DNA from: Caecitellus pseudoparvulus
Lineage: Eukaryota; Protista; Bigyra: Bicosoecida
Direction: 5' to 3'
Assembly: GCA_965644315.1 (NCBI GenBank)
Contig: CBFFRQ010000089.1
Coordinates: forward strand, 372,001 to 436,000
Length of the DNA stretch: 64,000 nucleotides
Shown here: in pieces, positions 20,759 through 34,802 of the stretch
How the letters are laid out: each line of letters starts with the position of its first letter
How positions within the stretch are numbered: the stretch's first letter is position 1
Program-made: the position numbers and the translations under genes
The notes under the pieces: generated by a model
What the model was told of the DNA's origin: nothing
What the model saw: only the letters and a program-made list of their open reading frames with translations
Databases searched by the model: none

Positions 20759-23700
20759 CAGGGATCGTCAGGGTGTCCGGCTCCGCACCCTTCGGGTGTC
20801 CGGCTGAAGGGGGCCTTCGGCCCCTCCAGCTGGACACCCGGGTGTCCGGGAACTGGCCTTCGGCCAGTTCTTGAACCCCCCCTCAAAGACCTCAATAAAC
20901 GATATCCTGTGGTCCATTGCAGCGCCTTATGGGTAGAATGCGTCTTTTTGTGTCATCCTCTGTGAATCTGTGTCCGTTTGAATGCGCTTCAAGTGAGATA
21001 CCCAATCCTTGGCAGAGCACGCAAGCAACTTTATGGTCATATTTGATTATTTGTACAGATATTGCTGCAGCTTTGCATCTGGGCAGGCAATCTTGTCCTA
21101 CTCAACACGGTACCAAGCCCAAATACTGCAAAATGTGTGCGATACTGCTTGTACGGCACTGTTTTGGTTGGCGTGGTGATCTGTGGTCTGTGTGGTGTCG
21201 CTTGCCTGGATGCCCAGAGCTCCGCGTACGCCCTCCTGTACAAGGAGCGAAAGCCATGAGGGGTGGAAATAGTATGCAGACACACTTTGCGATGAAACCT
21301 TGCCCAAATCGCGCAAAAGGGAATTAGTATCAAGCAGGAGAGGCGCCTCCATTGAGCTCCCGGATCCACCCGCCTGGACCATCCTTGAAACTTGTCTCCG
21401 CAAGCAGTGTCTCGGGCCTGAAAAGAAAGCCCGCCAAGATCAGTGCCTCAAAGCCAACTTTGCATTGGTATGCTATCTTCAGCACCTGATCTGTTTCTCC
21501 ACACGTCATCAAGCGTTCCCTGCTTCCCTCCACCGGACCTCGGCGCCTTCTTGGGACCGCTTGGAGGCGCTCCTCCCGCTCGGACTCTCTTCTTGCCACC
21601 AACAGCCCGGCGTGAAGGGGCAGCTGAAGCCCCGGCAAGTGAGCATGCACGCGCAGCAGGGGCAACTCGAGAGGAAACAAGCTGCCCAGCTAGCCCATCC
21701 AGGCCCTTGACGAGTGCCTGGCCCTGCTCCTGGCGAACAGAGTCGACTGAAGAGTTGCACACTTTGAAGCGTGGGGTCAGCCAGTCCCTGATGCGCCGAG
21801 TCACAAACTGCTGATTGGAAAGCAGCAGAAGTTGGCTGCCAAGCAATTGTGTGTGTGCCCTGGTCCTCTTGCCACTGGCACACCAGTCGGTCAGCACGGA
21901 GAAGAAGCGCTCAGCGCCTGCACTTGTGACTGGTGTTGAGTACAATGCCTGCGCTATACGGGAGAGGAGAGGCCAAGTTCTTCGTTTTTCTCTCCACCAT
22001 GCCTCCAGATCTTTGCAGGGCTCGGCTTGCTTTCTGCCATCGCTGCCGATCTCAAGGCAAGCAAGCTCTCGGTGACTCTCACAGTATGCGACAAAGTGAC
22101 GCCACTCTTCCTCAATTTGCAAAGCAGTCCCCACGTTGTTGTTCAACAAGTGTAGCAGCTCTTGTCCATGGTTTATCTGCCCTCTGCAAAGGTTCATGAC
22201 CAAAACACAGAACCTAGCAGAACGGGGAAGCTTCCCAGGCTCTGCGTGCGTGTAGTACTTGGGGACTGACTTTTCGAGGTGTGCAAAGCGAAGACCAGCG
22301 TCTGGCCGTGGGCGCAGCAGGTCCATGAGCTTCCACCTGGCGGCGATGACTGCGCCCCACTCCTTGAGCTTCCTCCATCCCCGATCCGCAGCCTGGAGGC
22401 GCAACTTAGCGGCGGTTGCTCGAGCGTGCTGCGGAGCTGGCAGGTATCTTCTCGCAGAATCTGAGTCACGTATAAAGCTCCCATCAAGCTCAGCTAGACA
22501 CTTTGCTCTTCCTGCCCGGTCTGCACCGACTATGAGTACCTCAGCAGAGAGCGTGGGTTGACGTTGCCCTTGTCTAATTTCTCTCAGCTTGTTCTCAACA
22601 AATGCAAACATTTCTGTACCACCCTCATGACCCATGTGACTTTGCAACTTTTCAATCATGCTCACAAGTGGTCTTGCCACTTCAACCATTGCTGCAAGCT
22701 GCAGCATTGTGTCAAACCTGCGCAGATTATTCAATGCCCTTTCTGCCTTGTTCTCAAACACAGTTGTGTTAGACCCCGAGCCGGAACGCGACTGAGCTGA
22801 AAGCCACGCAATCAAGGCCTTCCTTTTGATTAGGATCGCTTTCGCAGCTTTCCATACACTGCCCCAGCGTGTAGGTGCGAAGAGGTAGTCAGACGAGTAA
22901 GCCGATGCCGCCTTGGCAGACTCGCGATGGGGAGCAGGGTTCTGGCCAGCAAAGAGGTCTTTGACGCGCTGACAAACTTCAACACCCCACTCGAATTCGT
23001 CGAACACTTCCCCCACGGCCAATGCTGCCGAGTGTGCCATGCAGGGCACGCGTGGCAGCAGTGCCAAGCTCGCCATCCCCTTCCTGACAGAACTGGAGTC
23101 AAGCCACTCACACAGCACTCGTCGGCAAAATGTAGCCTTGCTCTCGTCCAGCTTTTTATGTGGAACAGAATCATCGCGCACGCGCATGAAATCAGTCGAA
23201 GCTGCTTCCTCAATCTCCCTCCTTGTCAGATTTGTGACGGGATCAACAATCTCAACCTCAGGTCCAGGATCCCGAGAAGGAGTGGCAGCTACAGGTGTAC
23301 TTAGGTCAAAGTAGTCGTCACCCAGGCCTGCTGCATCTCGCCTTCTCACTTCCTCCTGGCATTGAATGCGGCCGAGCGCAGCAGCAGCTTCCTTGGTTAG
23401 ACCATCGAGGCGATGCCCAAGTGCGCATTCCACTTCACGACGGCAGCTTTCACCAGCAGGCAGCGCAGAGATTGCGCTGCCGAGGCGTTGCAAGTCTTTG
23501 ATGGCCCTCACATTGACCGTGGCGTTGTCACATACAATCCCAGCCAGTCTGGCTGGGTTGAGATCCAGCTCGTACAGGACCACAAGGATCTGCTCCGTGA
23601 TTGCACGGGCATCTGAATGATCTACCTTCAAGAAAACTCGGCAAGGAATCGGCTCTGGAAGCAGCGAAGGGCATGACAGCACGACTGTAGTACAATTCAG

Positions 23701-24898
23701 CATCGTGTGGCTGATGCTTGTGTCATCCACTTGAAGGGACACCATGGCTTCTGGTTTCTCTGCCAGCTTCTTGCGCAGATCAGCAGTTATGTCATCGGCT
23801 GCTTGTCGAATGTCCCTGTACATCGTGCTTGAAGAGGCTTCTGAACCCCATACGGTCATCAGCATGTGGTTCTCAGGGGACATCACCTTCGCAATCTGTT
23901 GCGGCGACAGCCCATAGGAAGCGAAGTTCTGCACCAGAAGTTTTTGAGCGATTCGCGAGTGAGACTTGCTATCATGAGCGATCGTCTCTCCCGAGACAGG
24001 CACTGACTCGACAAGTACCTGTGCCTCATGCACGAGGTTCCGTGTGACGTGTCCCAGGGCTCTGTATGCCTCACTGTCAGACTGAGCTTTCATGGGCTTC
24101 TCAACACTGAACGTTTTGGCCAGTGCAAGAACTTCTTGCTTGGTCATGTGATGCTTGGCCGGCAGGTGCTTTCTGAGAAGCGTTTCCTTTCGTGCTTCAA
24201 CGAAGCACTTCAGGGTCTCGGACCACAGGATTGGTTTTCCAGTGCGCGAATCTGACCGCTGGAAATCCGCGAGACTGTTCCCTTTTGCCTTCCAACCCTT
24301 CAGCCCAAGAATTGCAAGCAGGGGGAAGTTGCCAATGCGTAGATCTGGGCACACAGCCCTCCACTTCTCAACTGCAGCCTTCCCTTGATTCTTGGTCTTG
24401 GTGTCGCAGAAGTGACGGAGTGCCTCCCGGCTGCAAAGCTCTCGCAAGAGGCAGCCGTTGCGGAAGAAAACCTTCAATTCAGTTGACAATCTAACAGCTC
24501 GAGGGAGCTCAGCGACAGTCACATCCTCCCCAGACTCAGCCGTGCCCTCTGCCATGATGAGGCGTAAAGTGAAACGTGACCGAAACCCCGGCTGACAGCA
24601 CCTCCGTTGCAAACGAACCTGGTTGTGTTCAGGAGCCTAGGGGCGTAAATATCAAGCCTCAAATACAAAACAGTGTTATGATTTGGTGCATTGATGGCAA
24701 AGTGGCACTTGACCCTGCTCGGGGACCAGCGCTGGCAAGCAGGCGGAGGGAGGAGGATGAGCGTCTCTCAGCACCTTGCACACGGGCGGCGAAGGGGGGG
24801 GGGGTCCACAAGGGGGGCACCCCCCCCAAGGTTGGGGTGTCCGGCATCTCAGCAAAAAAGGTGCGGAAATAGCTTCCCGGACACCCTGACGATCCCTG
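20759..24898 (-). mobile_element. Complete hAT DNA transposon (4140 bp)
   Basis: Perfect 22-bp TIRs CAGGGATCGTCAGGGTGTCCGG (20759-20780 and 24877-24898), 8-bp TSD TTTGGCAG (20751-20758 and 24899-24906), internal transposase, lower GC than host genes. Confidence 0.96.
21448..24555 (-). CDS. hAT transposase
   Basis: SLQVDDTS (D1), IVCDNATVN (D2), CMAH (CxxH), TRWGS, and WWREK..WPLLSRIA..TPVTSAGAERFFS (E, C-terminal dimerization domain). Uninterrupted ORF; start taken at MAEGTAES. Confidence 0.92.
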   Translation of the reverse strand: MAEGTAESGEDVTVAELPRAVRLSTELKVFFRNGCLLRELCSREALRHFCDTKTKNQGKAAVEKWRAVCPDLRIGNFPLLAILGLKGWKAKGNSLADFQRSDSRTGKPILWSETLKCFVEARKETLLRKHLPAKHHMTKQEVLALAKTFSVEKPMKAQSDSEAYRALGHVTRNLVHEAQVLVESVPVSGETIAHDSKSHSRIAQKLLVQNFASYGLSPQQIAKVMSPENHMLMTVWGSEASSSTMYRDIRQAADDITADLRKKLAEKPEAMVSLQVDDTSISHTMLNCTTVVLSCPSLLPEPIPCRVFLKVDHSDARAITEQILVVLYELDLNPARLAGIVCDNATVNVRAIKDLQRLGSAISALPAGESCRREVECALGHRLDGLTKEAAAALGRIQCQEEVRRRDAAGLGDDYFDLSTPVAATPSRDPGPEVEIVDPVTNLTRREIEEAASTDFMRVRDDSVPHKKLDESKATFCRRVLCEWLDSSSVRKGMASLALLPRVPCMAHSAALAVGEVFDEFEWGVEVCQRVKDLFAGQNPAPHRESAKAASAYSSDYLFAPTRWGSVWKAAKAILIKRKALIAWLSAQSRSGSGSNTTVFENKAERALNNLRRFDTMLQLAAMVEVARPLVSMIEKLQSHMGHEGGTEMFAFVENKLREIRQGQRQPTLSAEVLIVGADRAGRAKCLAELDGSFIRDSDSARRYLPAPQHARATAAKLRLQAADRGWRKLKEWGAVIAARWKLMDLLRPRPDAGLRFAHLEKSVPKYYTHAEPGKLPRSARFCVLVMNLCRGQINHGQELLHLLNNNVGTALQIEEEWRHFVAYCESHRELACLEIGSDGRKQAEPCKDLEAWWREKRRTWPLLSRIAQALYSTPVTSAGAERFFSVLTDWCASGKRTRAHTQLLGSQLLLLSNQQFVTRRIRDWLTPRFKVCNSSVDSVRQEQGQALVKGLDGLAGQLVSSRVAPAARACSLAGASAAPSRRAVGGKKRVRAGGAPPSGPKKAPRSGGGKQGTLDDVWRNRSGAEDSIPMQSWL

Positions 24899-26607: not shown

Positions 26608-29600
26608 TCACCATGACCGGTATTCCCGATTCCGAAGTCTCACGATTGCGTCCTGGTGACCTTGCTTTGCTGCAGCCTTGTACCACCGCACAGCCTCAGC
26701 ATCATCGAAGGCCACGCCCCTGCCACTGGCGTACATCATTCCAAGGCAGTACTGTCCTTCCGCATGTCCCTGCTCAGCCGCTGCCCTGTACCACCGCACC
26801 GCCTCAGCCTCATCCTTGGCCACGCCCCTGCCGTTCGCGTACATGTCGCCAAGCATGCACTGCCTCTCCGCATGTCCCTGCTCAGCCGCTGCCCTGTACC
26901 ACCGCACCGCCTCAGCATCATCCATGGCCACGCCCCTGCCCCTGGCGTACATCATTCCAAGGCAGTACTGTCCTTCCGCATGTCCCTGCTCAGCCGCTGC
27001 CCTGTACCACCGCACCGCCTCAGCATCATCCATGGCCACGCCCCTGCCCCTGGCGTACATCATTCCAAGGCAGTACTGTCCTTCCGCATGTCCCTGCTCA
27101 GCCGCTGCCCTGTACCACCGCACTGCCTCAGCATCATCCTTGGCCACGCCCCTGCCCCTGGCGTACATCATTCCAAGGCAGTACTGTCCTTCCGCATGTC
27201 CCTGCTCAGCCGCTGCCCTGTACCACCGCACCGCCTCAGCATCATCCTTGGCCACGCCCCTGCCCCTGGCGTACATTTCGCCCAGCTTGGTCTGCCCACC
27301 CGCATGTCCCTGCTCAGCCGCTGCCCTGTACCACCGCACTGCCTCAGCATCATCCTTGGCCACGCCCCTGCCGTTGGCATACATGTCGCCCAGCCCGCAC
27401 TGCCCCTCCGCATGTCCCTGCTCAGCCGCTGCCCTGTACCACCGCACCGCCTCAGCATCATCGAAGGCCACGCCCCTGCCCCTGGCGTACATCATTCCAA
27501 GGCAGTAGTGTCCCTCCGCATGTCCCTGCTCCGCCGCCGCCCTGTACCACCGCACTGCCTCAGCATCATCCTTGGCCACGCCCCTGCCGTTCGCGTACAT
27601 GTCGCCAAGCATGCACTGCCTCTCCGCATGTCCCTGCTCAGCCGCTGCCCTGTACCACCGCACCGCCTCAGCATCATCCATGGCCACGCCCCTGCCCCTG
27701 GCGTACATCATTCCAAGGCAGTACTGTCCTTCCGCATGTCCCTGCTCAGCCGCTGCCCTGTACCACCGCACTGCCTCAGCATCATCCTTGGCCACGCCCC
27801 TGCCGTTCGCGTACATGTCACCCAGCTTTACAAAAGCCATTATACTTCCCGACTCAGCTGCTCGACGCATAGTTGCAGTATCCACCCCAGCACCCTTTCC
27901 GCACCATGCTCCATCCTCAACCCCAGCCACACCCTTCATGTGCTGGAAAAAAGCCCTTTCCATATCACCTCCGCCTTGCAAAATCCCCCACACGCCGATG
28001 CAGTCACTCGAGTCCCTCCCAAGCGCAGCCATGCTCCCTACACTTCTTTCAACATCAACCAATCCGTTGCACTTCCCAGCCTTCCGAATGTCACCAGTCT
28101 CCTGCACTTTTTCCCGCCACCTTCGCATACTATCCCACAAACCTTGCACCTCTCCTTCACCGCTCGCAGCCACAACATCCCAAACACGGCCAATGCCACG
28201 ATCTTGAACTTCACCCCGCGCCAAACCTACACCATCGGCACACCCACTTCCCTCTCCCTTGTCCCACATGCCCACTCCACCAAAACTCGTTAGCACACTC
28301 CCACCTCTATCACCATCACTATCGCCATCACCATCACCGCCACCACACCCCAGGCCCAACGTGCTCCTCAACGCATCACGCCACTCTCCATCCCCACCCT
28401 CTACCTGTCCCATACTCGCAACACACACACGAACTGATGCCACACCCCGCACCACATCTTCTGGATCACCATTACCCCCTTCCACCACGAGTGCCCCCAA
28501 AGCACTTCCTCCTACATATCCAACCTCTGACTCCTCACAAGTTCTCAACACGCCCAAACACTTCCGTGCCCAATTCGCTCTCACATGGTCCCCGACATCC
28601 TCCCACCCTTCTCTTGTCAGTTCATGAAGCACAGGCACCCCCACATCCGCAAATACCTGCAGCACCACGCTCATCCACACTCCCAATGGATCACGAGCAT
28701 TGCCATAGCCTTGTTTTACGCACACAGCCACACCCTTCAGCGTCTGAACAGGCGGCGCACACCCCTCACTCTTTGCCCACGCATTCAGCCGTTGACCCAG
28801 CAGCAGCCCAGACACAGCATCACACACCTCCTTTCTACATTCTGCCACCCACTCACCATCACCTCCCTCCCCAAACAGTACTGGAACCTTGAACTCACTT
28901 CGCCACTCCACCACCATGCCTCCACCATCAGCACGCAGGAATGCACGCCCACCGCCACTCACATCCACATTCACACTCGCACCCACACCATCGCCCTCCA
29001 CCATGTCCACCTCTGGCACACCAAGACTCCCAAGCTTGCCCAGAGCCTCCGCCATCTCTTCCACATGACATGCTGTGCTTGCCATGGAACCTTCATCACT
29101 CTCACTCAACCGCTCGGAGGTGGCATGTAGTATGGACTGAGCACCACCCACTGTTCTCCTTATATCCACACCCCCCGCACCATCCACTTCAACTTCACCA
29201 ACCACACCCCGCACATGCCGCGGCACCCATGCAGCCAGCCCACACAGCACAGTCTCACGAGCATCGCACGTCTCCAGCCAGAAGCTCACCCGCCGCCACG
29301 CAACCACAATGCTCCCGTACACACGGTCCAGCCGCGCCTCATCCACCCACTCGTCTCGCACCAGTGTCCCCCGCACCATGTCTTGCAAGGCATCCTGTGC
29401 CATGTGCACTCGCCAGCACAACCTCCTCAACCCTCGCTCAGCTCGCTCAAGCACCTTGCCTCTCGTTTCCTCCAGAATCCGCACCAGCCCAGCCTCGATC
29501 CGCCCCAGTGCCTCCAGCTGTCTCTCCACACCCATCCACTCCCCAATCTCGGGCATAGGCTCGCCCACCGCGCTTGCCAACCCTTTCAGTGCTTCTGCAA

Positions 29601-29880
29601 CTTCGCCTCGCACAGCCACGCTATCCACACATGGCCCTCGAGCCACATCAATCAACGCATCGACAGGTCCGATGCCCGTGGTCGCCCCACCTGCACCTGA
29701 TGCAGACATGATGACACTCCCGCTCTCTGTGGGTGTGGCAGGGGCCATGAAATGCCACAGGCGTTGTGGGCAGCACTTGTCACAACTGGCGACGCTCTCA
29801 CCAATTTCCGCTCGTCGAATCAAGAAGCAAGTCACGGCAAGCTGTGATTGATGTTTCGCCTTCGGCAAACGAAGAGACAT
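26608..29880 (-). CDS. Large protein with an unknown N-terminal region and 11 C-terminal Sel1-like repeats; start could be 29880, 29748 or 29709
   Basis: LGxMYAxGRGVAxDDAEAVRWYRAAAEQGH repeated 11 times in a single uninterrupted ORF. Confidence 0.88.
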   Translation of the reverse strand: MSLRLPKAKHQSQLAVTCFLIRRAEIGESVASCDKCCPQRLWHFMAPATPTESGSVIMSASGAGGATTGIGPVDALIDVARGPCVDSVAVRGEVAEALKGLASAVGEPMPEIGEWMGVERQLEALGRIEAGLVRILEETRGKVLERAERGLRRLCWRVHMAQDALQDMVRGTLVRDEWVDEARLDRVYGSIVVAWRRVSFWLETCDARETVLCGLAAWVPRHVRGVVGEVEVDGAGGVDIRRTVGGAQSILHATSERLSESDEGSMASTACHVEEMAEALGKLGSLGVPEVDMVEGDGVGASVNVDVSGGGRAFLRADGGGMVVEWRSEFKVPVLFGEGGDGEWVAECRKEVCDAVSGLLLGQRLNAWAKSEGCAPPVQTLKGVAVCVKQGYGNARDPLGVWMSVVLQVFADVGVPVLHELTREGWEDVGDHVRANWARKCLGVLRTCEESEVGYVGGSALGALVVEGGNGDPEDVVRGVASVRVCVASMGQVEGGDGEWRDALRSTLGLGCGGGDGDGDSDGDRGGSVLTSFGGVGMWDKGEGSGCADGVGLARGEVQDRGIGRVWDVVAASGEGEVQGLWDSMRRWREKVQETGDIRKAGKCNGLVDVERSVGSMAALGRDSSDCIGVWGILQGGGDMERAFFQHMKGVAGVEDGAWCGKGAGVDTATMRRAAESGSIMAFVKLGDMYANGRGVAKDDAEAVRWYRAAAEQGHAEGQYCLGMMYARGRGVAMDDAEAVRWYRAAAEQGHAERQCMLGDMYANGRGVAKDDAEAVRWYRAAAEQGHAEGHYCLGMMYARGRGVAFDDAEAVRWYRAAAEQGHAEGQCGLGDMYANGRGVAKDDAEAVRWYRAAAEQGHAGGQTKLGEMYARGRGVAKDDAEAVRWYRAAAEQGHAEGQYCLGMMYARGRGVAKDDAEAVRWYRAAAEQGHAEGQYCLGMMYARGRGVAMDDAEAVRWYRAAAEQGHAEGQYCLGMMYARGRGVAMDDAEAVRWYRAAAEQGHAERQCMLGDMYANGRGVAKDEAEAVRWYRAAAEQGHAEGQYCLGMMYASGRGVAFDDAEAVRWYKAAAKQGHQDAIVRLRNREYRSW
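26650..27837 (-). repeat. 11 x 108-bp near-identical coding tandem repeat (Sel1)
   Basis: 1188 bp = 11 x 108; recurring core CGCATGTCCCTGCTCAGCCGCTGCCCTGTACCACCGCAC on the + strand. Confidence 0.95.
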
Positions 29881-30322
29881 GAACTTAGATAGGCAGCTTG
29901 TGATCAGCGACCGGGAAGTTGTGTAGGAGGAGAGTTTTGCATGGAGCGACGACTTGAGCAGCTAATTGCTGCGCCACCCACACTAATAGGTCTCGTGAAA
30001 CCTTACAGTAAGAAATTGCTGATTGACTACTGTAGGAGTTCAGGCTTATATCAGAAATGGCGAAATGAGGATTCTTGGGATATTTGAGTTGGGAACCCCA
30101 CCAAAAACTGATCGATATGTACTTCATGCGGAATCAATCGCTTGCACTCGCCAGCCTGATGCAGGTTTTGCTGTAGGTCGTAGTGATTGGCAAGTGAGAA
30201 TTGCGGAAATCGGTTTGCAGGAATAAAATGATACTTCACTCAAATCCAACTCAGAGCATACTAAAAGCTGCACAACTTATCCCAGTACTACGGACTTTAG
30301 TTTTGGCTTGGATTCTTTCCAG

Positions 30323-31660
30323 ATGGCCGCCCATCCGGCTGGCGGGAGCCAGCATGGTTCCCAACCCCACTCAACAACCCCGAATGGCCAACAGGATGCC
30401 GTACAACGCGGAATCGTAAAACCCAGAGGAGTCCCAGTCCCAGATGACGTTGTACTGACCCTTTTCGCAGTGAGTTTTGGCGCTGGATCTTGCTGCTGTA
30501 GGTGTGGTACCCCACAAACCCGTTTCAAATGAAACGCCTAGATTGCCTCAAGCTGGCTGGAGAAGAAAATGGACGAAGGTGGGTCCCTTGTCGATGCTCT
30601 TCCGCATAAAGCTGCAGAAAAGACCCAGTTTATCAAGTTCTTGGAGCGATTGATCAGCGCGGGAGCCGGAACCGTGGACGTCCCCGGTGGCGTTTCATGG
30701 CTGGTGCGGCCTGAGCATGCAGCTGCATACCTTGGCGTTCCAACAGAGGGAAACGTGGGCCCTGCAGGGCTGTACTGGTCTGCTGCACATGCCCAAGCAA
30801 AGTTGTCAGCTTTCTTGGCAGACCGCAAGAACGGGAAGTCTGTACAGAGGACTTTCCACAACCTGCAATTGAAGGGCAGACTGCGACGGGGACTCAAGGA
30901 AGCCATCCAGGCCCTTGAGCTTCTTGCAGAGCATGCAGTGGAAAATCCAGCCGTGGCATTCCCAGAGGATCCAACTAAATGCCCTTCTGATCCAGCATTG
31001 CTCCCATTTTCAGCCTTGCTGCGGGTACATGTTCACAACCAGGAGGCTCACTCAGGTCCGTGCCTTGGCCCCACCCTGACTCCGGGAAGTGAAGAAGTTG
31101 CACGCTTCGCAGCAGCTTTCGGGTACATTCGTTACCATTCAGTGGTGCGCATGGCTGTTCGCGTGAACCCAAAGCTTGAGCGAAGCCGACGGAAGCGTCA
31201 GCGTACGTCCCCGGCCCTCGATCGACCACGGTCCAAATCGGTTCGAGGAGCTCAGACCCCAAGCCCGGGACAGGCGGGTACCCCTAGCAACATTGCTGAT
31301 ACGCTGGTTGATGAACTTACTGAGGCGGCATGTCAGATCGACCCCGCGGCAGTCCCCTTCTTGTCTGTCGAGACCGCTCTGTCTCTTGAGGAGCAAGACG
31401 CTGCAATCGCAGCAGTAGCACAAGCAACTGAGGCTTCAGCATCAAGACGCAATGCTGGAAACCGCGGCAGTGACCCAAGCGGTCTGTTTCACAGCGCTGC
31501 AGTGCTTCGAAAGGCTGCCCAACAAGCAAAAGAGTGCTTCGATGTGTCAAGGGACTCTCAACGCATGCACGACACTCTGAAGGAGGCTCTTGTCCAGCTC
31601 TTGGACAGGATGACGTCGATCGAGCAAGCAGTGACACGGATAGAGGCTCGTCTTGCATGA
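30323..31660 (+). CDS. Transposon accessory protein (ORF2), unknown family; exons 30323-30469 and 30542-31660
   Basis: A GTGAGT...TAG 72-nt phase-0 intron joins a 49-codon exon in frame with the 363-aa ORF. Basic NLS-like RSRRKRQR and a C-terminal coiled coil. Lies within the TIRs. Confidence 0.7.
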
Positions 31661-31829
31661 TCCAGGGGACACACCTTTCACTCCTTCCGTCCCGAGTGTA
31701 AAGTCATTGTATTTGTTGTGTATGGTGATCAGAGGAGGGAACAGGAGCGAGACACGGCTTTGCTGATCAATGCACGCTGCCGGGTGGGCCAGGGGGAAGA
31801 CACCATTGAGAGGGGTGGTGTCCTCGAGC

Positions 31830-32280
31830 TCACTTCGGTAGGGCAGATCCCGCTGCCGTGGCTGTGCCTTGCGAAGCGCAGGAAAGTGTCAGCCGGTGAA
31901 CGAGGTCGCCCCTCGTACCAATGCAAGACAACCCCGTTTCTTCACATCGTTGGCGAAGCTGGTCGATGGTCATCCGCGCTATCGAGTCCGGGTCCAGACA
32001 AGGGTCACCCTCAAGGAGAAGTCCAGACGCAAACTCCACGAGCGGGCTGTCCTCCAAACCAGATCCCGGACACTGCAACAGGCTAAGCTCCACTGGAGTG
32101 CAGTTCTTGTCCAATGCCAACCTCTCTGCGATCAGAGGGAGTGTGTTGTACAAGTGCGTCGCTGCTCCCGAGGAGTGCAGCTCTTGTTCCTCGGTTCCAT
32201 CCTCGTGGTAGTAGTACACCTCCCACATTGCGGTGTAGGGGTGGACCAACACTGCGTAGCCTCGCTCGGGTTGTGACCCC
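31830..32280 (-). CDS. SAP-domain-containing segment, probably the frameshifted C-terminus of the PHIS transposase
   Basis: MTIDQLRQRCEETGLSCIGTRGDLVHRL fits the SAP consensus. The frame overlaps the transposase ORF end across a G6 run at 32277-32282. Confidence 0.65.
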
Positions 32281-34039
32281 CCGAGTACATGAGAGGTTCG
32301 TTTTGCCGAAGGACCATCCCGTGAAACCACTTTCGCAGTCGTGGCATGACTTCCTGTTGTGCACTGCCTCGACTCCGTGTATGACGGGGTTGACCCGGCA
32401 CAGCAGATGCTGTGCCGGGCTTCTTGCTCCTCTTCTTCAAGGATGACAAGCCCCCTTGGTCCAGGTCCTGCAGCACCTCGCGATCAAGTCCATGGAGCAG
32501 CGTCGTCATGGTTTGGATCTGCTCCCAAAGCTCTGACGAGGCCCCGCGAGGGGGCTGGGCTTCAACCTCAGGCGCAGATTCCCCTTGTGCATCACGCACA
32601 GCTTTGGCAACGGCCTGATAAGCCACCTTCATGGGTCGCTTGTTGCGCCGGACTTGCATCAGTCGGGGCAGGTCTTCAAATGTGCGATCTGCTGCCTCCC
32701 CTAATGCACGGTCGGCCTTTACAGTGAGATGGAGCAAGCTCAACGAGTGATTCTTTCGAAGCAGCCATGACTCGCTTCGGAGGCTGCGACGAGTGTAAAG
32801 CATCCGAAATGCAACAAGACCTGTGACCGCCTTGACCGTCAAGAGCAGAAGTGCCTTTTGGTCTGCGAGGAACGGCATCTGTGAGTGTCTTTCGCTCAAC
32901 CTACCATTGAACGACTTGATGACGTTGTTGCAGTTCTCCACTACAAGCCTTGCGCTGCTTATCATCTCCGTTCGCAGATCCAAGCTAAGCAGCATCCCAG
33001 ACGCCATGCGCAGCCTCTCGAGCTCTTCGGCATCCTCCCACCCAGCCTCAATGTGCTGGGTGATCTTGTCGGCCCACTGTTTGAGGTGGGATGGCTTGTC
33101 TCCCGCTACAATGTGCTTGTTGGAGTGCCAGTACAATGCATCTCCTAGCAGCAGATCGCCTGGCTCCATGACTCCATGGCGGCGCAGGGTTCGCACCGCG
33201 TCTGACGCCGCCGCAACTTCAGACTGTGATCCAGGCCCCATCTCAAAAATAGCCAAGGGAACTCCAGTGAGGTCTGTCACAAGCAGGAAGTCGTAACCTG
33301 GAATCTTGTGGTGGACGTTGTAGTGGGATTGGGGTCGGCCCGGCATCGCTTGCATCGGGATGGTTACCCCATCCACTGCCCCGACAACACGGCCAAGTGC
33401 GCCGCCAAAAATCCCGTGAGACACGTCCCGCTGATCTTCGGGTATCTTGAGCATCAAATTTCTGGTGGCAACAGAGAGGACGAAGGGAATCACCTCCCGG
33501 AAGATCCCATGCATAGATCCTTCCGGCATCTTCGTAATGATCGCCAGAGCGGCAGGAGGGTGCCCACGGAGCTGGGAAATGCAAATGAAAATCCGTACAA
33601 AGGCTGAGTGCTGCTTGGTTTGCATGTTTTTGGCCTTTACGAGAGCTCTCTGGACTTCGTCAGAGAAGTGCCTGTACATCTCTGCGTTCATCCCCGTTAA
33701 CCTCCAACAGTGCCTCGGGTTCTGCAGCGTCGCTTCAATAGACTGGCGAATGACAAGTGGCTTGATCCTACGAAGCCTACCTCTGCCTTTTGCTGCTCCG
33801 AACTTCGCTTCCCGCTGATCCCTGCGGGTGTAGCCTTCGGCTCGAAGCTGGCCTGCCAAGGCATGCACCGAGTGTACAAGCAACGACTGCCCTGTGACAA
33901 GTGAGGCCGCACCAAGGTTCATCATGTGGGCACTTGCTTCAAGAATTCCTTGAGCTATTCCGCGTGACGACCTTTCCGGGACAGCTGTGGCCGTTCGCAA
34001 CGGGGCGCCGGATCGGTCTCGTTTCGTCGCCATCACCAC
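32132..34039 (-). CDS. PIF/Harbinger-type DDE transposase (DDE_Tnp_4/HARBI1-like)
   Basis: VVGAVDGVTIP (D1), YNVHHK, LLVTDLTG, GPGS, LLGDALY (D2), SSARLVVEN (E); upstream HTH-like region RLTGMNAEMY...FREVIP. Confidence 0.85.
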   Translation of the reverse strand: MVMATKRDRSGAPLRTATAVPERSSRGIAQGILEASAHMMNLGAASLVTGQSLLVHSVHALAGQLRAEGYTRRDQREAKFGAAKGRGRLRRIKPLVIRQSIEATLQNPRHCWRLTGMNAEMYRHFSDEVQRALVKAKNMQTKQHSAFVRIFICISQLRGHPPAALAIITKMPEGSMHGIFREVIPFVLSVATRNLMLKIPEDQRDVSHGIFGGALGRVVGAVDGVTIPMQAMPGRPQSHYNVHHKIPGYDFLLVTDLTGVPLAIFEMGPGSQSEVAAASDAVRTLRRHGVMEPGDLLLGDALYWHSNKHIVAGDKPSHLKQWADKITQHIEAGWEDAEELERLRMASGMLLSLDLRTEMISSARLVVENCNNVIKSFNGRLSERHSQMPFLADQKALLLLTVKAVTGLVAFRMLYTRRSLRSESWLLRKNHSLSLLHLTVKADRALGEAADRTFEDLPRLMQVRRNKRPMKVAYQAVAKAVRDAQGESAPEVEAQPPRGASSELWEQIQTMTTLLHGLDREVLQDLDQGGLSSLKKRSKKPGTASAVPGQPRHTRSRGSAQQEVMPRLRKWFHGMVLRQNEPLMYSGGHNPSEATQCWSTPTPQCGRCTTTTRMEPRNKSCTPREQRRTCTTHSL

Positions 34040-34802
34040 TGGGTGAGAATTCGGCTTGGAAGAGGAAACCGGGCGAACAAATGGCGGAAGTTATGAGAAA
34101 GCTTGAGGTTGGCCATGAATTGCGTGAAATTTTTGAGCCAGCGCTTATTCTGAAAGAGGTAGACGGCCTTGGGTGATTGGCCGTTTTCTTTCGGTGCCCG
34201 TAACGCCAACGGCCAACGGCACCATCAAACAAAAAACTCAAATTTGAAGTATTTGAATTTTGGCGAAGCCCCCCCGCCGGGTCTTGTTGCGCAAAACCTC
34301 CAAGAACGCAAAATTGCTCTAAGAATGTTGAGCATAGTGCTAGACCTTATATCAGTTTGTCCTACATTTGCCCTTATTGCAGGGTTTCACGAGACCTAAC
34401 TAAAATGAACTGCCATCGAAGCACAGACAAAGTTCAGCACCCCGCACTCGTTCCAGAAGCTCCGAGCAGAAGCACAACACTACCGTTCAGATCAAACGCT
34501 GCTCGACAATCCAATTCCAAGGTGATCTTCTTCTCCATGCTTGTCTGCTTCGCACGCGAGCTCACCCTTCTCCACTTCGCCTCCCACGAGAGCCTTTCCT
34601 TTCAATCACGAGTTACAAAAACCAGACACCCCACAATTCCCACAATTTATCTATGTACGGCGCTTCCCCATGCTTTATCTGCCCAGCTGCACTCCGTAGC
34701 AAGCCTCGTACACCGCAGACTGCCTCAGCAGCTTCATCATCTTTGCCCAGGACACAGCTTCAGGGACCCGGGCAAGGTCGTGACGCAGGAGCACCCATCG
34801 CC

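What the first reader, a model, noticed from the sequence alone, without database searches (positions are those of the whole stretch)
29982..34403. PHIS/Harbinger-type transposon with atypical termini: TAGG-starting TIRs and an apparent 5-bp TSD (ACTAA)
Seen: 26-bp TIRs (outer 16 perfect, three transition mismatches), ACTAA immediately outside both ends, a DDE_Tnp_4-like transposase with D, D and E present, and a second convergent gene. Known: PIF/Harbinger elements usually make 3-bp TWA duplications and ISL2EU elements 2-bp AT; as I recall, the 5-bp group (NuwaII) prefers CTNAG. ACTAA fits none of these. An alternative reading is GG-starting TIRs with a TA duplication, which would leave the ACTAA match as chance and is also non-standard. 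Inference: this may be an undescribed PHIS lineage with its own cleavage stagger, inserted recently.
Basis: partly seen in the sequence, partly recalled or inferred. Interest (0 to 1): 0.8.

Follow-up and report, generated by a model that had tools for sequence, protein, structure and literature searches.

The report
Harbinger-related transposon leaving five-base scars
This is a very recently active 4.4-kb cut-and-paste jumping gene of a marine protist that duplicates five bases of its target, where the papers I read give zero to four for its known relatives, and it belongs to a small separate branch of the Harbinger/IS5 group that I could not find described.

Summary
Confirmed. The element spans window 29987-34398, with 26-bp TAGG..CCTA inverted repeats, a DDE transposase and a convergent orphan gene. 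The genome holds about ten near-identical copies. All seven two-ended copies have a 5-bp target duplication, with six different sequences, so ACTAA is not a motif; the preference is N-Y-W-R-N. The TA/GG reading is refuted, and an empty site in a wild metagenome has the length a 5-bp duplication predicts. The full transposase is 734 aa (HTH, DDE, ~100-aa unassigned domain, SAP); the window's frameshift is probably a homopolymer assembly error. The transposase forms a 100/100 clade with 13 ~700-aa relatives (own genome, marine or saline samples), with its own motifs (Y..HH, G.G..E). Its nearest outside relatives are PHIS/ISL2 transposases, and its sister group is unresolved. A second TAGG family also points to 5 bp; a GG family gives 4 (or 6). 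Reviews give 0-3 bp (Harbinger relatives) or 0-4 bp (PHIS with IS5). Verdict: new PHIS-related lineage with a longer stagger. No Repbase or labelled Pangu/Spy references could be tested. The scan noted this family before on other copies (s1-652646, s1-661177).

The parts
29982..29986 (.). left copy of the 5-bp target-site duplication (ACTAA)
29987..30012 (+). left TIR, 26 bp, starts TAGG
   Evidence: identical in all full copies
30569..31660 (+). ORF2, 363 aa orphan helper: N-terminal ~200-aa region, low-complexity linker, predicted C-terminal long helix
   Evidence: no Pfam or Atlas hit; synonymous excess 16:12 against L058, p 7e-4; a second gene at the same place in every full relative
31830..34033 (-). 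transposase, 734 aa in the 7-C form: HTH (aa ~92-192), RNase H-like DDE core, helical region, unassigned C-terminal domain, SAP
32936..33373 (-). catalytic triad: D221 (33371-33373), D298 (33140-33142), E366 (32936-32938); clade motifs H241-H242 and E272
32277..32282 (.). run of 6 C here, 7 C in three other assembled copies and in two short-read runs; the 6-C form breaks the transposase frame; probably an assembly error in this copy
32010..32326 (-). clade-specific C-terminal beta-rich domain (aa ~570-675), no known fold assigned
   Evidence: conserved across the clade; pLDDT 80-90; not covered by any VIA match, not folded alone
31887..31979 (-). SAP domain, found only in this family of the clade
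   Evidence: Pfam PF02037 E 1.5e-5; VIA Z 6.1, rmsd 1.4, 43 aligned to a SAP structure; 1 of 6 own-genome members
34373..34398 (-). right TIR, ends CCTA
34399..34403 (.). right copy of the target-site duplication (ACTAA)

Best explanation
An autonomous, very recently active two-gene cut-and-paste DNA transposon of a separate PHIS (Harbinger/ISL2EU/IS5)-related lineage. SHOWN: the element ends, ~10 near-identical copies, 5-bp duplications of variable sequence with a central A/T, an RNase H-fold DDE transposase with an intact triad, a conserved second gene, and a deleted derivative with intact ends. INFERRED from what is established for DDE transposases: the transposase binds the TIRs through its HTH, excises the element and joins the two ends to target phosphates 5 nt apart; host gap filling gives the 5-bp duplication. 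The weak Y-W-R core suggests a symmetric, bendable target like the 3-bp CWG/TWA cores of Nuwa and Harbinger, cut one base further out on each side. ORF2 most likely acts as the DNA-binding/assembly partner, as Myb/SANT ORF1 does in Harbinger (inferred from position and architecture only). The C-terminal domain and SAP probably add non-specific DNA or chromatin contact (inferred, weakest step).
For: 7/7 exact 5-bp duplications and no other register works; central W in 12/13 flanks, p 8e-5; empty site of the expected length; depth 807 vs 77-80 = ~10 copies; profile search gives 15 hits at E<=1e-10, then generic DDE_Tnp_4 at E>=1.5e-7; clade support 100/100, stem 0.89; motif alignment with PHIS/ISL2; fold matches Tn5 (Z 10.3, rmsd 5.8, 245 aligned) and other DDE enzymes; same anatomy in relatives.
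Against: No labelled Pangu/Harbinger2, HarbingerS, Spy or PHISTA sequence was in the tree; AU tests reject no sister grouping (p 0.10-0.28). No RNA run holds the element. ORF2 has no homologue of known function and its model is unusable (pLDDT 40). TSD evidence for relatives comes from short-read contigs that may be chimeric.
Confidence: 0.78

Rival explanations
1. A long-branch member of an already named PHIS group (most plausibly Pangu/Harbinger2/HarbingerS, whose second ORF also lacks known motifs) that has shifted its stagger to 5 bp.
For: Han et al. 2015 found no motif in Pangu ORF2, and Pangu TIRs start AG or GG; the tree leaves the sister group open.
Against: Pangu is defined by ANT 3-bp TSDs, not met here; none of the 26 nearest PHIS-type proteins falls inside the clade; the ~300-aa C-terminal extension and the HH and SE motifs are clade-specific among the sequences compared.
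Confidence: 0.13
2. Already catalogued in Repbase or Dfam under a generic Harbinger or ISL2EU label, with the 5-bp TSD recorded.
For: Repbase holds families never described in papers (own knowledge); I could not search it.
Against: No clade protein carries an informative name; the host has no named close relative (Vac14 at most 41% identical to named species); reviews of 2023 and 2025 list no 5-bp PHIS TSD.
Confidence: 0.07
3. The element starts GG and duplicates TA (or 3 bp), and the 5-bp match is chance.
For: TA is present at both ends of every copy, and GG-starting TIRs are common in PHIS.
Against: Six different 5-mers are each repeated exactly outside TAGG..CCTA in 7/7 copies; the empty site lacks TA and has the 5-bp length.
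Confidence: 0.01

Closest known systems
PIF/Harbinger
   Same: DDE_Tnp_4-type core with HTH, two genes, short TIRs, ~4-4.5 kb, A/T-centred target
   Different: 5-bp N-Y-W-R-N duplication instead of 3-bp TWA; no Myb/SANT detected in ORF2; ~730-aa transposase with extra C-terminal domain; Y..HH and G.G..E where the Harbinger-like proteins have Y..RK and PGS.HD
Pangu / Harbinger2 / HarbingerS
   Same: two genes, second ORF with no known motif, PHIS-type DDE
   Different: ANT 3-bp TSD not met; phylogenetic relation untested for lack of labelled references
NuwaI / NuwaII
   Same: target core often C-W-G-like; NuwaII has a 3-versus-5-bp ambiguity
   Different: outer bases here are variable and still duplicated, so 5 bp is unambiguous; no fixed CTNAG; no Myb/SANT; TIRs start TAGG
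ISL2EU / Spy / bacterial ISL2 group of IS5
   Same: aligned DDE motifs; same unresolved node of the tree
   Different: no THAP or HTH_Tnp_4 match, no YqaJ nuclease; TSD 5 bp instead of 2 (ISL2EU) or 0 (Spy)
Transib and hAT5 (other 5-bp duplicators)
   Same: 5-bp TSD
   Different: different transposase families; no profile or motif match

Membership tests
PHIS superfamily (broad) | transposase alignable over the DDE core with Harbinger/ISL2EU/IS5 (E<1e-4 criterion in Han 2015) | tested here: met
   PF13359 E 1.2e-6; nearest outside proteins scanned are all DDE_Tnp_4; triad aligned
PHIS superfamily (broad) | TIRs and cut-and-paste anatomy | tested here: met
PHIS superfamily (broad) | TSD of 0-3 bp (PMC12730594) or 0-4 bp (PMC10045372) | tested here: not met
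   5 bp in 7/7 copies
PIF/Harbinger | TWA 3-bp TSD | tested here: not met
PIF/Harbinger | Myb/SANT second protein | tested here: not met
   no Pfam or Atlas hit; model too poor to exclude a very divergent one
PIF/Harbinger | nests in the Harbinger clade | tested here: inconclusive
   outside the 13-row Harbinger-like clade (99/92) in the best tree; sister relation not rejected, p-AU 0.096
ISL2EU | AT 2-bp TSD, THAP-HTH-DDE, YqaJ second gene | tested here: not met
Spy | no TSD, AAATTT target, single gene | tested here: not met
Pangu/Harbinger2 | ANT 3-bp TSD | tested here: not met
Pangu/Harbinger2 | nests with reference Pangu transposases | not testable with these tools
   no labelled reference sequences available by id
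NuwaI/NuwaII | CWG or C|TNA|G target, Myb/SANT ORF2 | tested here: not met
PHISTA | TA TSD | tested here: not met

The most novel reading that the evidence does not exclude
A new group-level branch of PHIS, as deep as Harbinger, ISL2EU and Pangu, so far seen only in marine and saline samples, in which sister families with alignable transposases cut their targets with different staggers (5, 4 or 6, possibly 3 nt) and which has already yielded a domesticated catalytically dead host gene. The active families in one genome would be a natural series for finding what sets the stagger of a PHIS transpososome.
Probability: 0.55. Interest if true: 0.65.

Novelty: new variant of a known kind. Interest (0 to 1): 0.5.

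Why it matters
TSD length is the trait by which PHIS groups are defined, and it reflects the spacing of the two active sites on the target. A lineage with a firm 5-bp duplication extends the range given in the reviews I read, and shows that 5-bp TSDs cannot be used alone to call an element Transib-like or hAT5. Intact, recently active families with different staggers in one genome make the determinant testable by domain swaps. The element is also a candidate tagging tool for a protist lineage with no named close relative.

Tried and rejected
GG/TA and 3-bp registers: rejected. CACTA at 29981-29985: flank coincidence; other copies have unrelated flanks. Programmed frameshift at the C run: unlikely, since relatives encode the tail in frame and the dominant short-read form is 7 C; 6 C does occur in the decayed C95-type copy, so it is not excluded for this copy. 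Word search for transposase homologues: none. PDB sequence search and NCBIfam: no informative hit. ORF2: only a 91%-identical relative, no Atlas hit, model pLDDT 40.

Full report
Observation. Inverted repeats of 26 nt lie at 29987-30012 and 34373-34398, the outer 16 perfect, with ACTAA directly outside both. Inside are a plus-strand 363-aa ORF (30569-31660) and a minus-strand transposase that matches DDE_Tnp_4, tail to tail.

Copies. The genome (30.6 Mb, 215 contigs) holds six complete copies, three cut by contig ends, one 1,937-bp internally deleted copy, one left-end fragment and one older 95%-identical truncated copy with stop codons. Apart from the older copy they are identical except for one base in a C run. 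In the probable source run the element has depth 807 against 77-80 for its flanks, about ten copies. This is a very recent burst. The deleted copy lost ~2.5 kb at an 11-bp microhomology and kept its ends and duplication.

Target duplication. All seven two-ended copies are flanked by an exact 5-bp direct repeat: CCTAC, CTTGT, TCTCA, CGAGA, GCAGA, ACTAA, GCAGA. One match has a chance of about 1e-3. Moving the boundary inward two bases gives only the invariant TA, which leaves the 5-bp matches unexplained; moving it outward merely re-reads the middle of the 5-mer. The central base is A or T in 12 of 13 known flanks (p 8e-5), with a pyrimidine before and a purine after favoured. A contig from a wild marine metagenome joins 29960 to 34403 with 25 letters between, in register with the window's flank; 25 is the number a 5-bp duplication predicts, against 27 for 3 bp and 28 for 2 bp. 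That allele is diverged, so it supports the length rather than the exact sequence. Another run (organism B) has the element at a different site.

Transposase. Three assembled copies have seven C at window 32277-32282 and a single 734-aa frame (34033 to 31830); the window copy has six and a frameshift. Short-read contigs of the source sample and of organism B carry only the 7-C form. Contigs drop minor variants, but six of nine assembled copies cannot be a minority, so most 6-C calls are assembly errors; for this one copy it is probable, not proven, because the decayed older subfamily does show 6 C. The model (mean pLDDT 74.6) has an HTH, an RNase H-like core with D221, D298 and E366, a helical region, a small beta-rich domain and a SAP domain. 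Structure searches return DDE transposases and integrases for the core (Tn5 Z 10.3) and SAP domains for the tail; residues ~440-670 are unmatched but were not folded alone.

Relatives. A word search found nothing, so I used the full profile search once. It returned 15 proteins at E<=1e-10, several full length (~700 aa), then a gap to generic DDE_Tnp_4 proteins at E>=1.5e-7. Five further families sit in the same genome. The contigs of the relatives, mostly marine or saline metagenomes by their source records as I recognise them, show the same anatomy: transposase, convergent orphan gene, TIRs, 4.2-4.7 kb. On 287 core columns the 14 clade members form one branch (100/100, stem 0.89) in an open polytomy with Harbinger-like, ISL2EU-like and bacterial ISL2-group proteins (the catalytically dead pair L057/P0063 and fragments were left out). 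AU tests reject no sister grouping. Labels for the outside proteins came from Pfam domains only; no named Pangu, Spy or PHISTA sequence was available. The clade replaces the usual K after the Y motif by H and the [HS]D motif by E.

Ends in relatives. Two more families start TAGG (P0003, L078; 36-45% identical proteins). In the P0003 family one contig's left flank ends CTGGT and two others' right flank begins CTGGT, which fits one insertion with a 5-bp duplication split across short-read assemblies. Family E starts GG; one contig gives a 4-bp CAAG duplication inside C..G, which could also be read as 6 bp. One further contig may show 3 bp (L066). So 5 bp is firm for this family, likely for the TAGG subclade, and not general to the lineage.

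ORF2. It has no Pfam, Atlas or distant sequence match, but it shows an excess of synonymous changes (16:12 against L058, p 7e-4; 10:13 against the older copy, p 0.07) and has positional counterparts with weak N-terminal similarity. A Harbinger-like helper role is an inference from position and architecture.

Comparison with the literature. Han et al. 2015 (PMC4482050) define the PHIS groups by TSD: TWA, AT, none, ANT, CWG, and C|TNA|G, which they judge most likely 3 bp. Kojima 2025 (PMC12730594) states 0, 2 or 3 bp for Harbinger relatives, and PMC10045372 states none or 1-4 bp for PHIS with IS5. I found no 5-bp PHIS group in five searches; Repbase could not be searched. The element works like a Harbinger-type transposon and passes the broad transposase test for PHIS, but fails the defining TSD of every named group.

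Limits. No RNA run holds the element. The host is an intron-poor, GC-rich marine eukaryote without a close named relative. Earlier notes of this scan reached the same reading on other copies and sister families; I saw them after forming my own and do not count them as evidence.

Verdict. Real, recent and unusual for its group: a new variant (lineage) of a known kind. Interest 0.5.

Noticed in passing
L057 (G000:C94, ~158.9-161.1 kb); L073: Single-copy clade member with the triad and HH motif lost but an intact 740-aa frame; a 94%-identical counterpart in another sample lies between ankyrin and Pro-kuma_activ genes with no ORF2 and no TIR found. Candidate domesticated pseudo-transposase.
   Followed up: partly
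L047-L056 (family E): Ten ~99.9%-identical copies; a G6/G7 run splits the frame in some, like the C run here, probably the same assembly artefact; C at -5 in most flanks.
   Followed up: partly
G000:C181:1-9190 (L045, L050): A family E copy is nested inside a family C element, whose far TIR lies just beyond it.
   Followed up: partly
window 20759-24898: hAT element with perfect 22-bp TIRs and a 1054-aa ORF with the hAT dimerisation domain.
   Followed up: no
window 26608-29880: Sel1-repeat gene (11 repeats of 108 bp) whose 5' region is multi-copy in the genome (depth); the element sits about 100 bp upstream of its ATG, in a GC-poorer stretch between it and a likely divergently transcribed gene.
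   Followed up: no
L028 (G000:C95): Older 95% subfamily copy, truncated and with stops; the same left flank appears in a wild metagenome, so that insertion is shared. Its first base is C here and T in the wild contig.
   Followed up: partly
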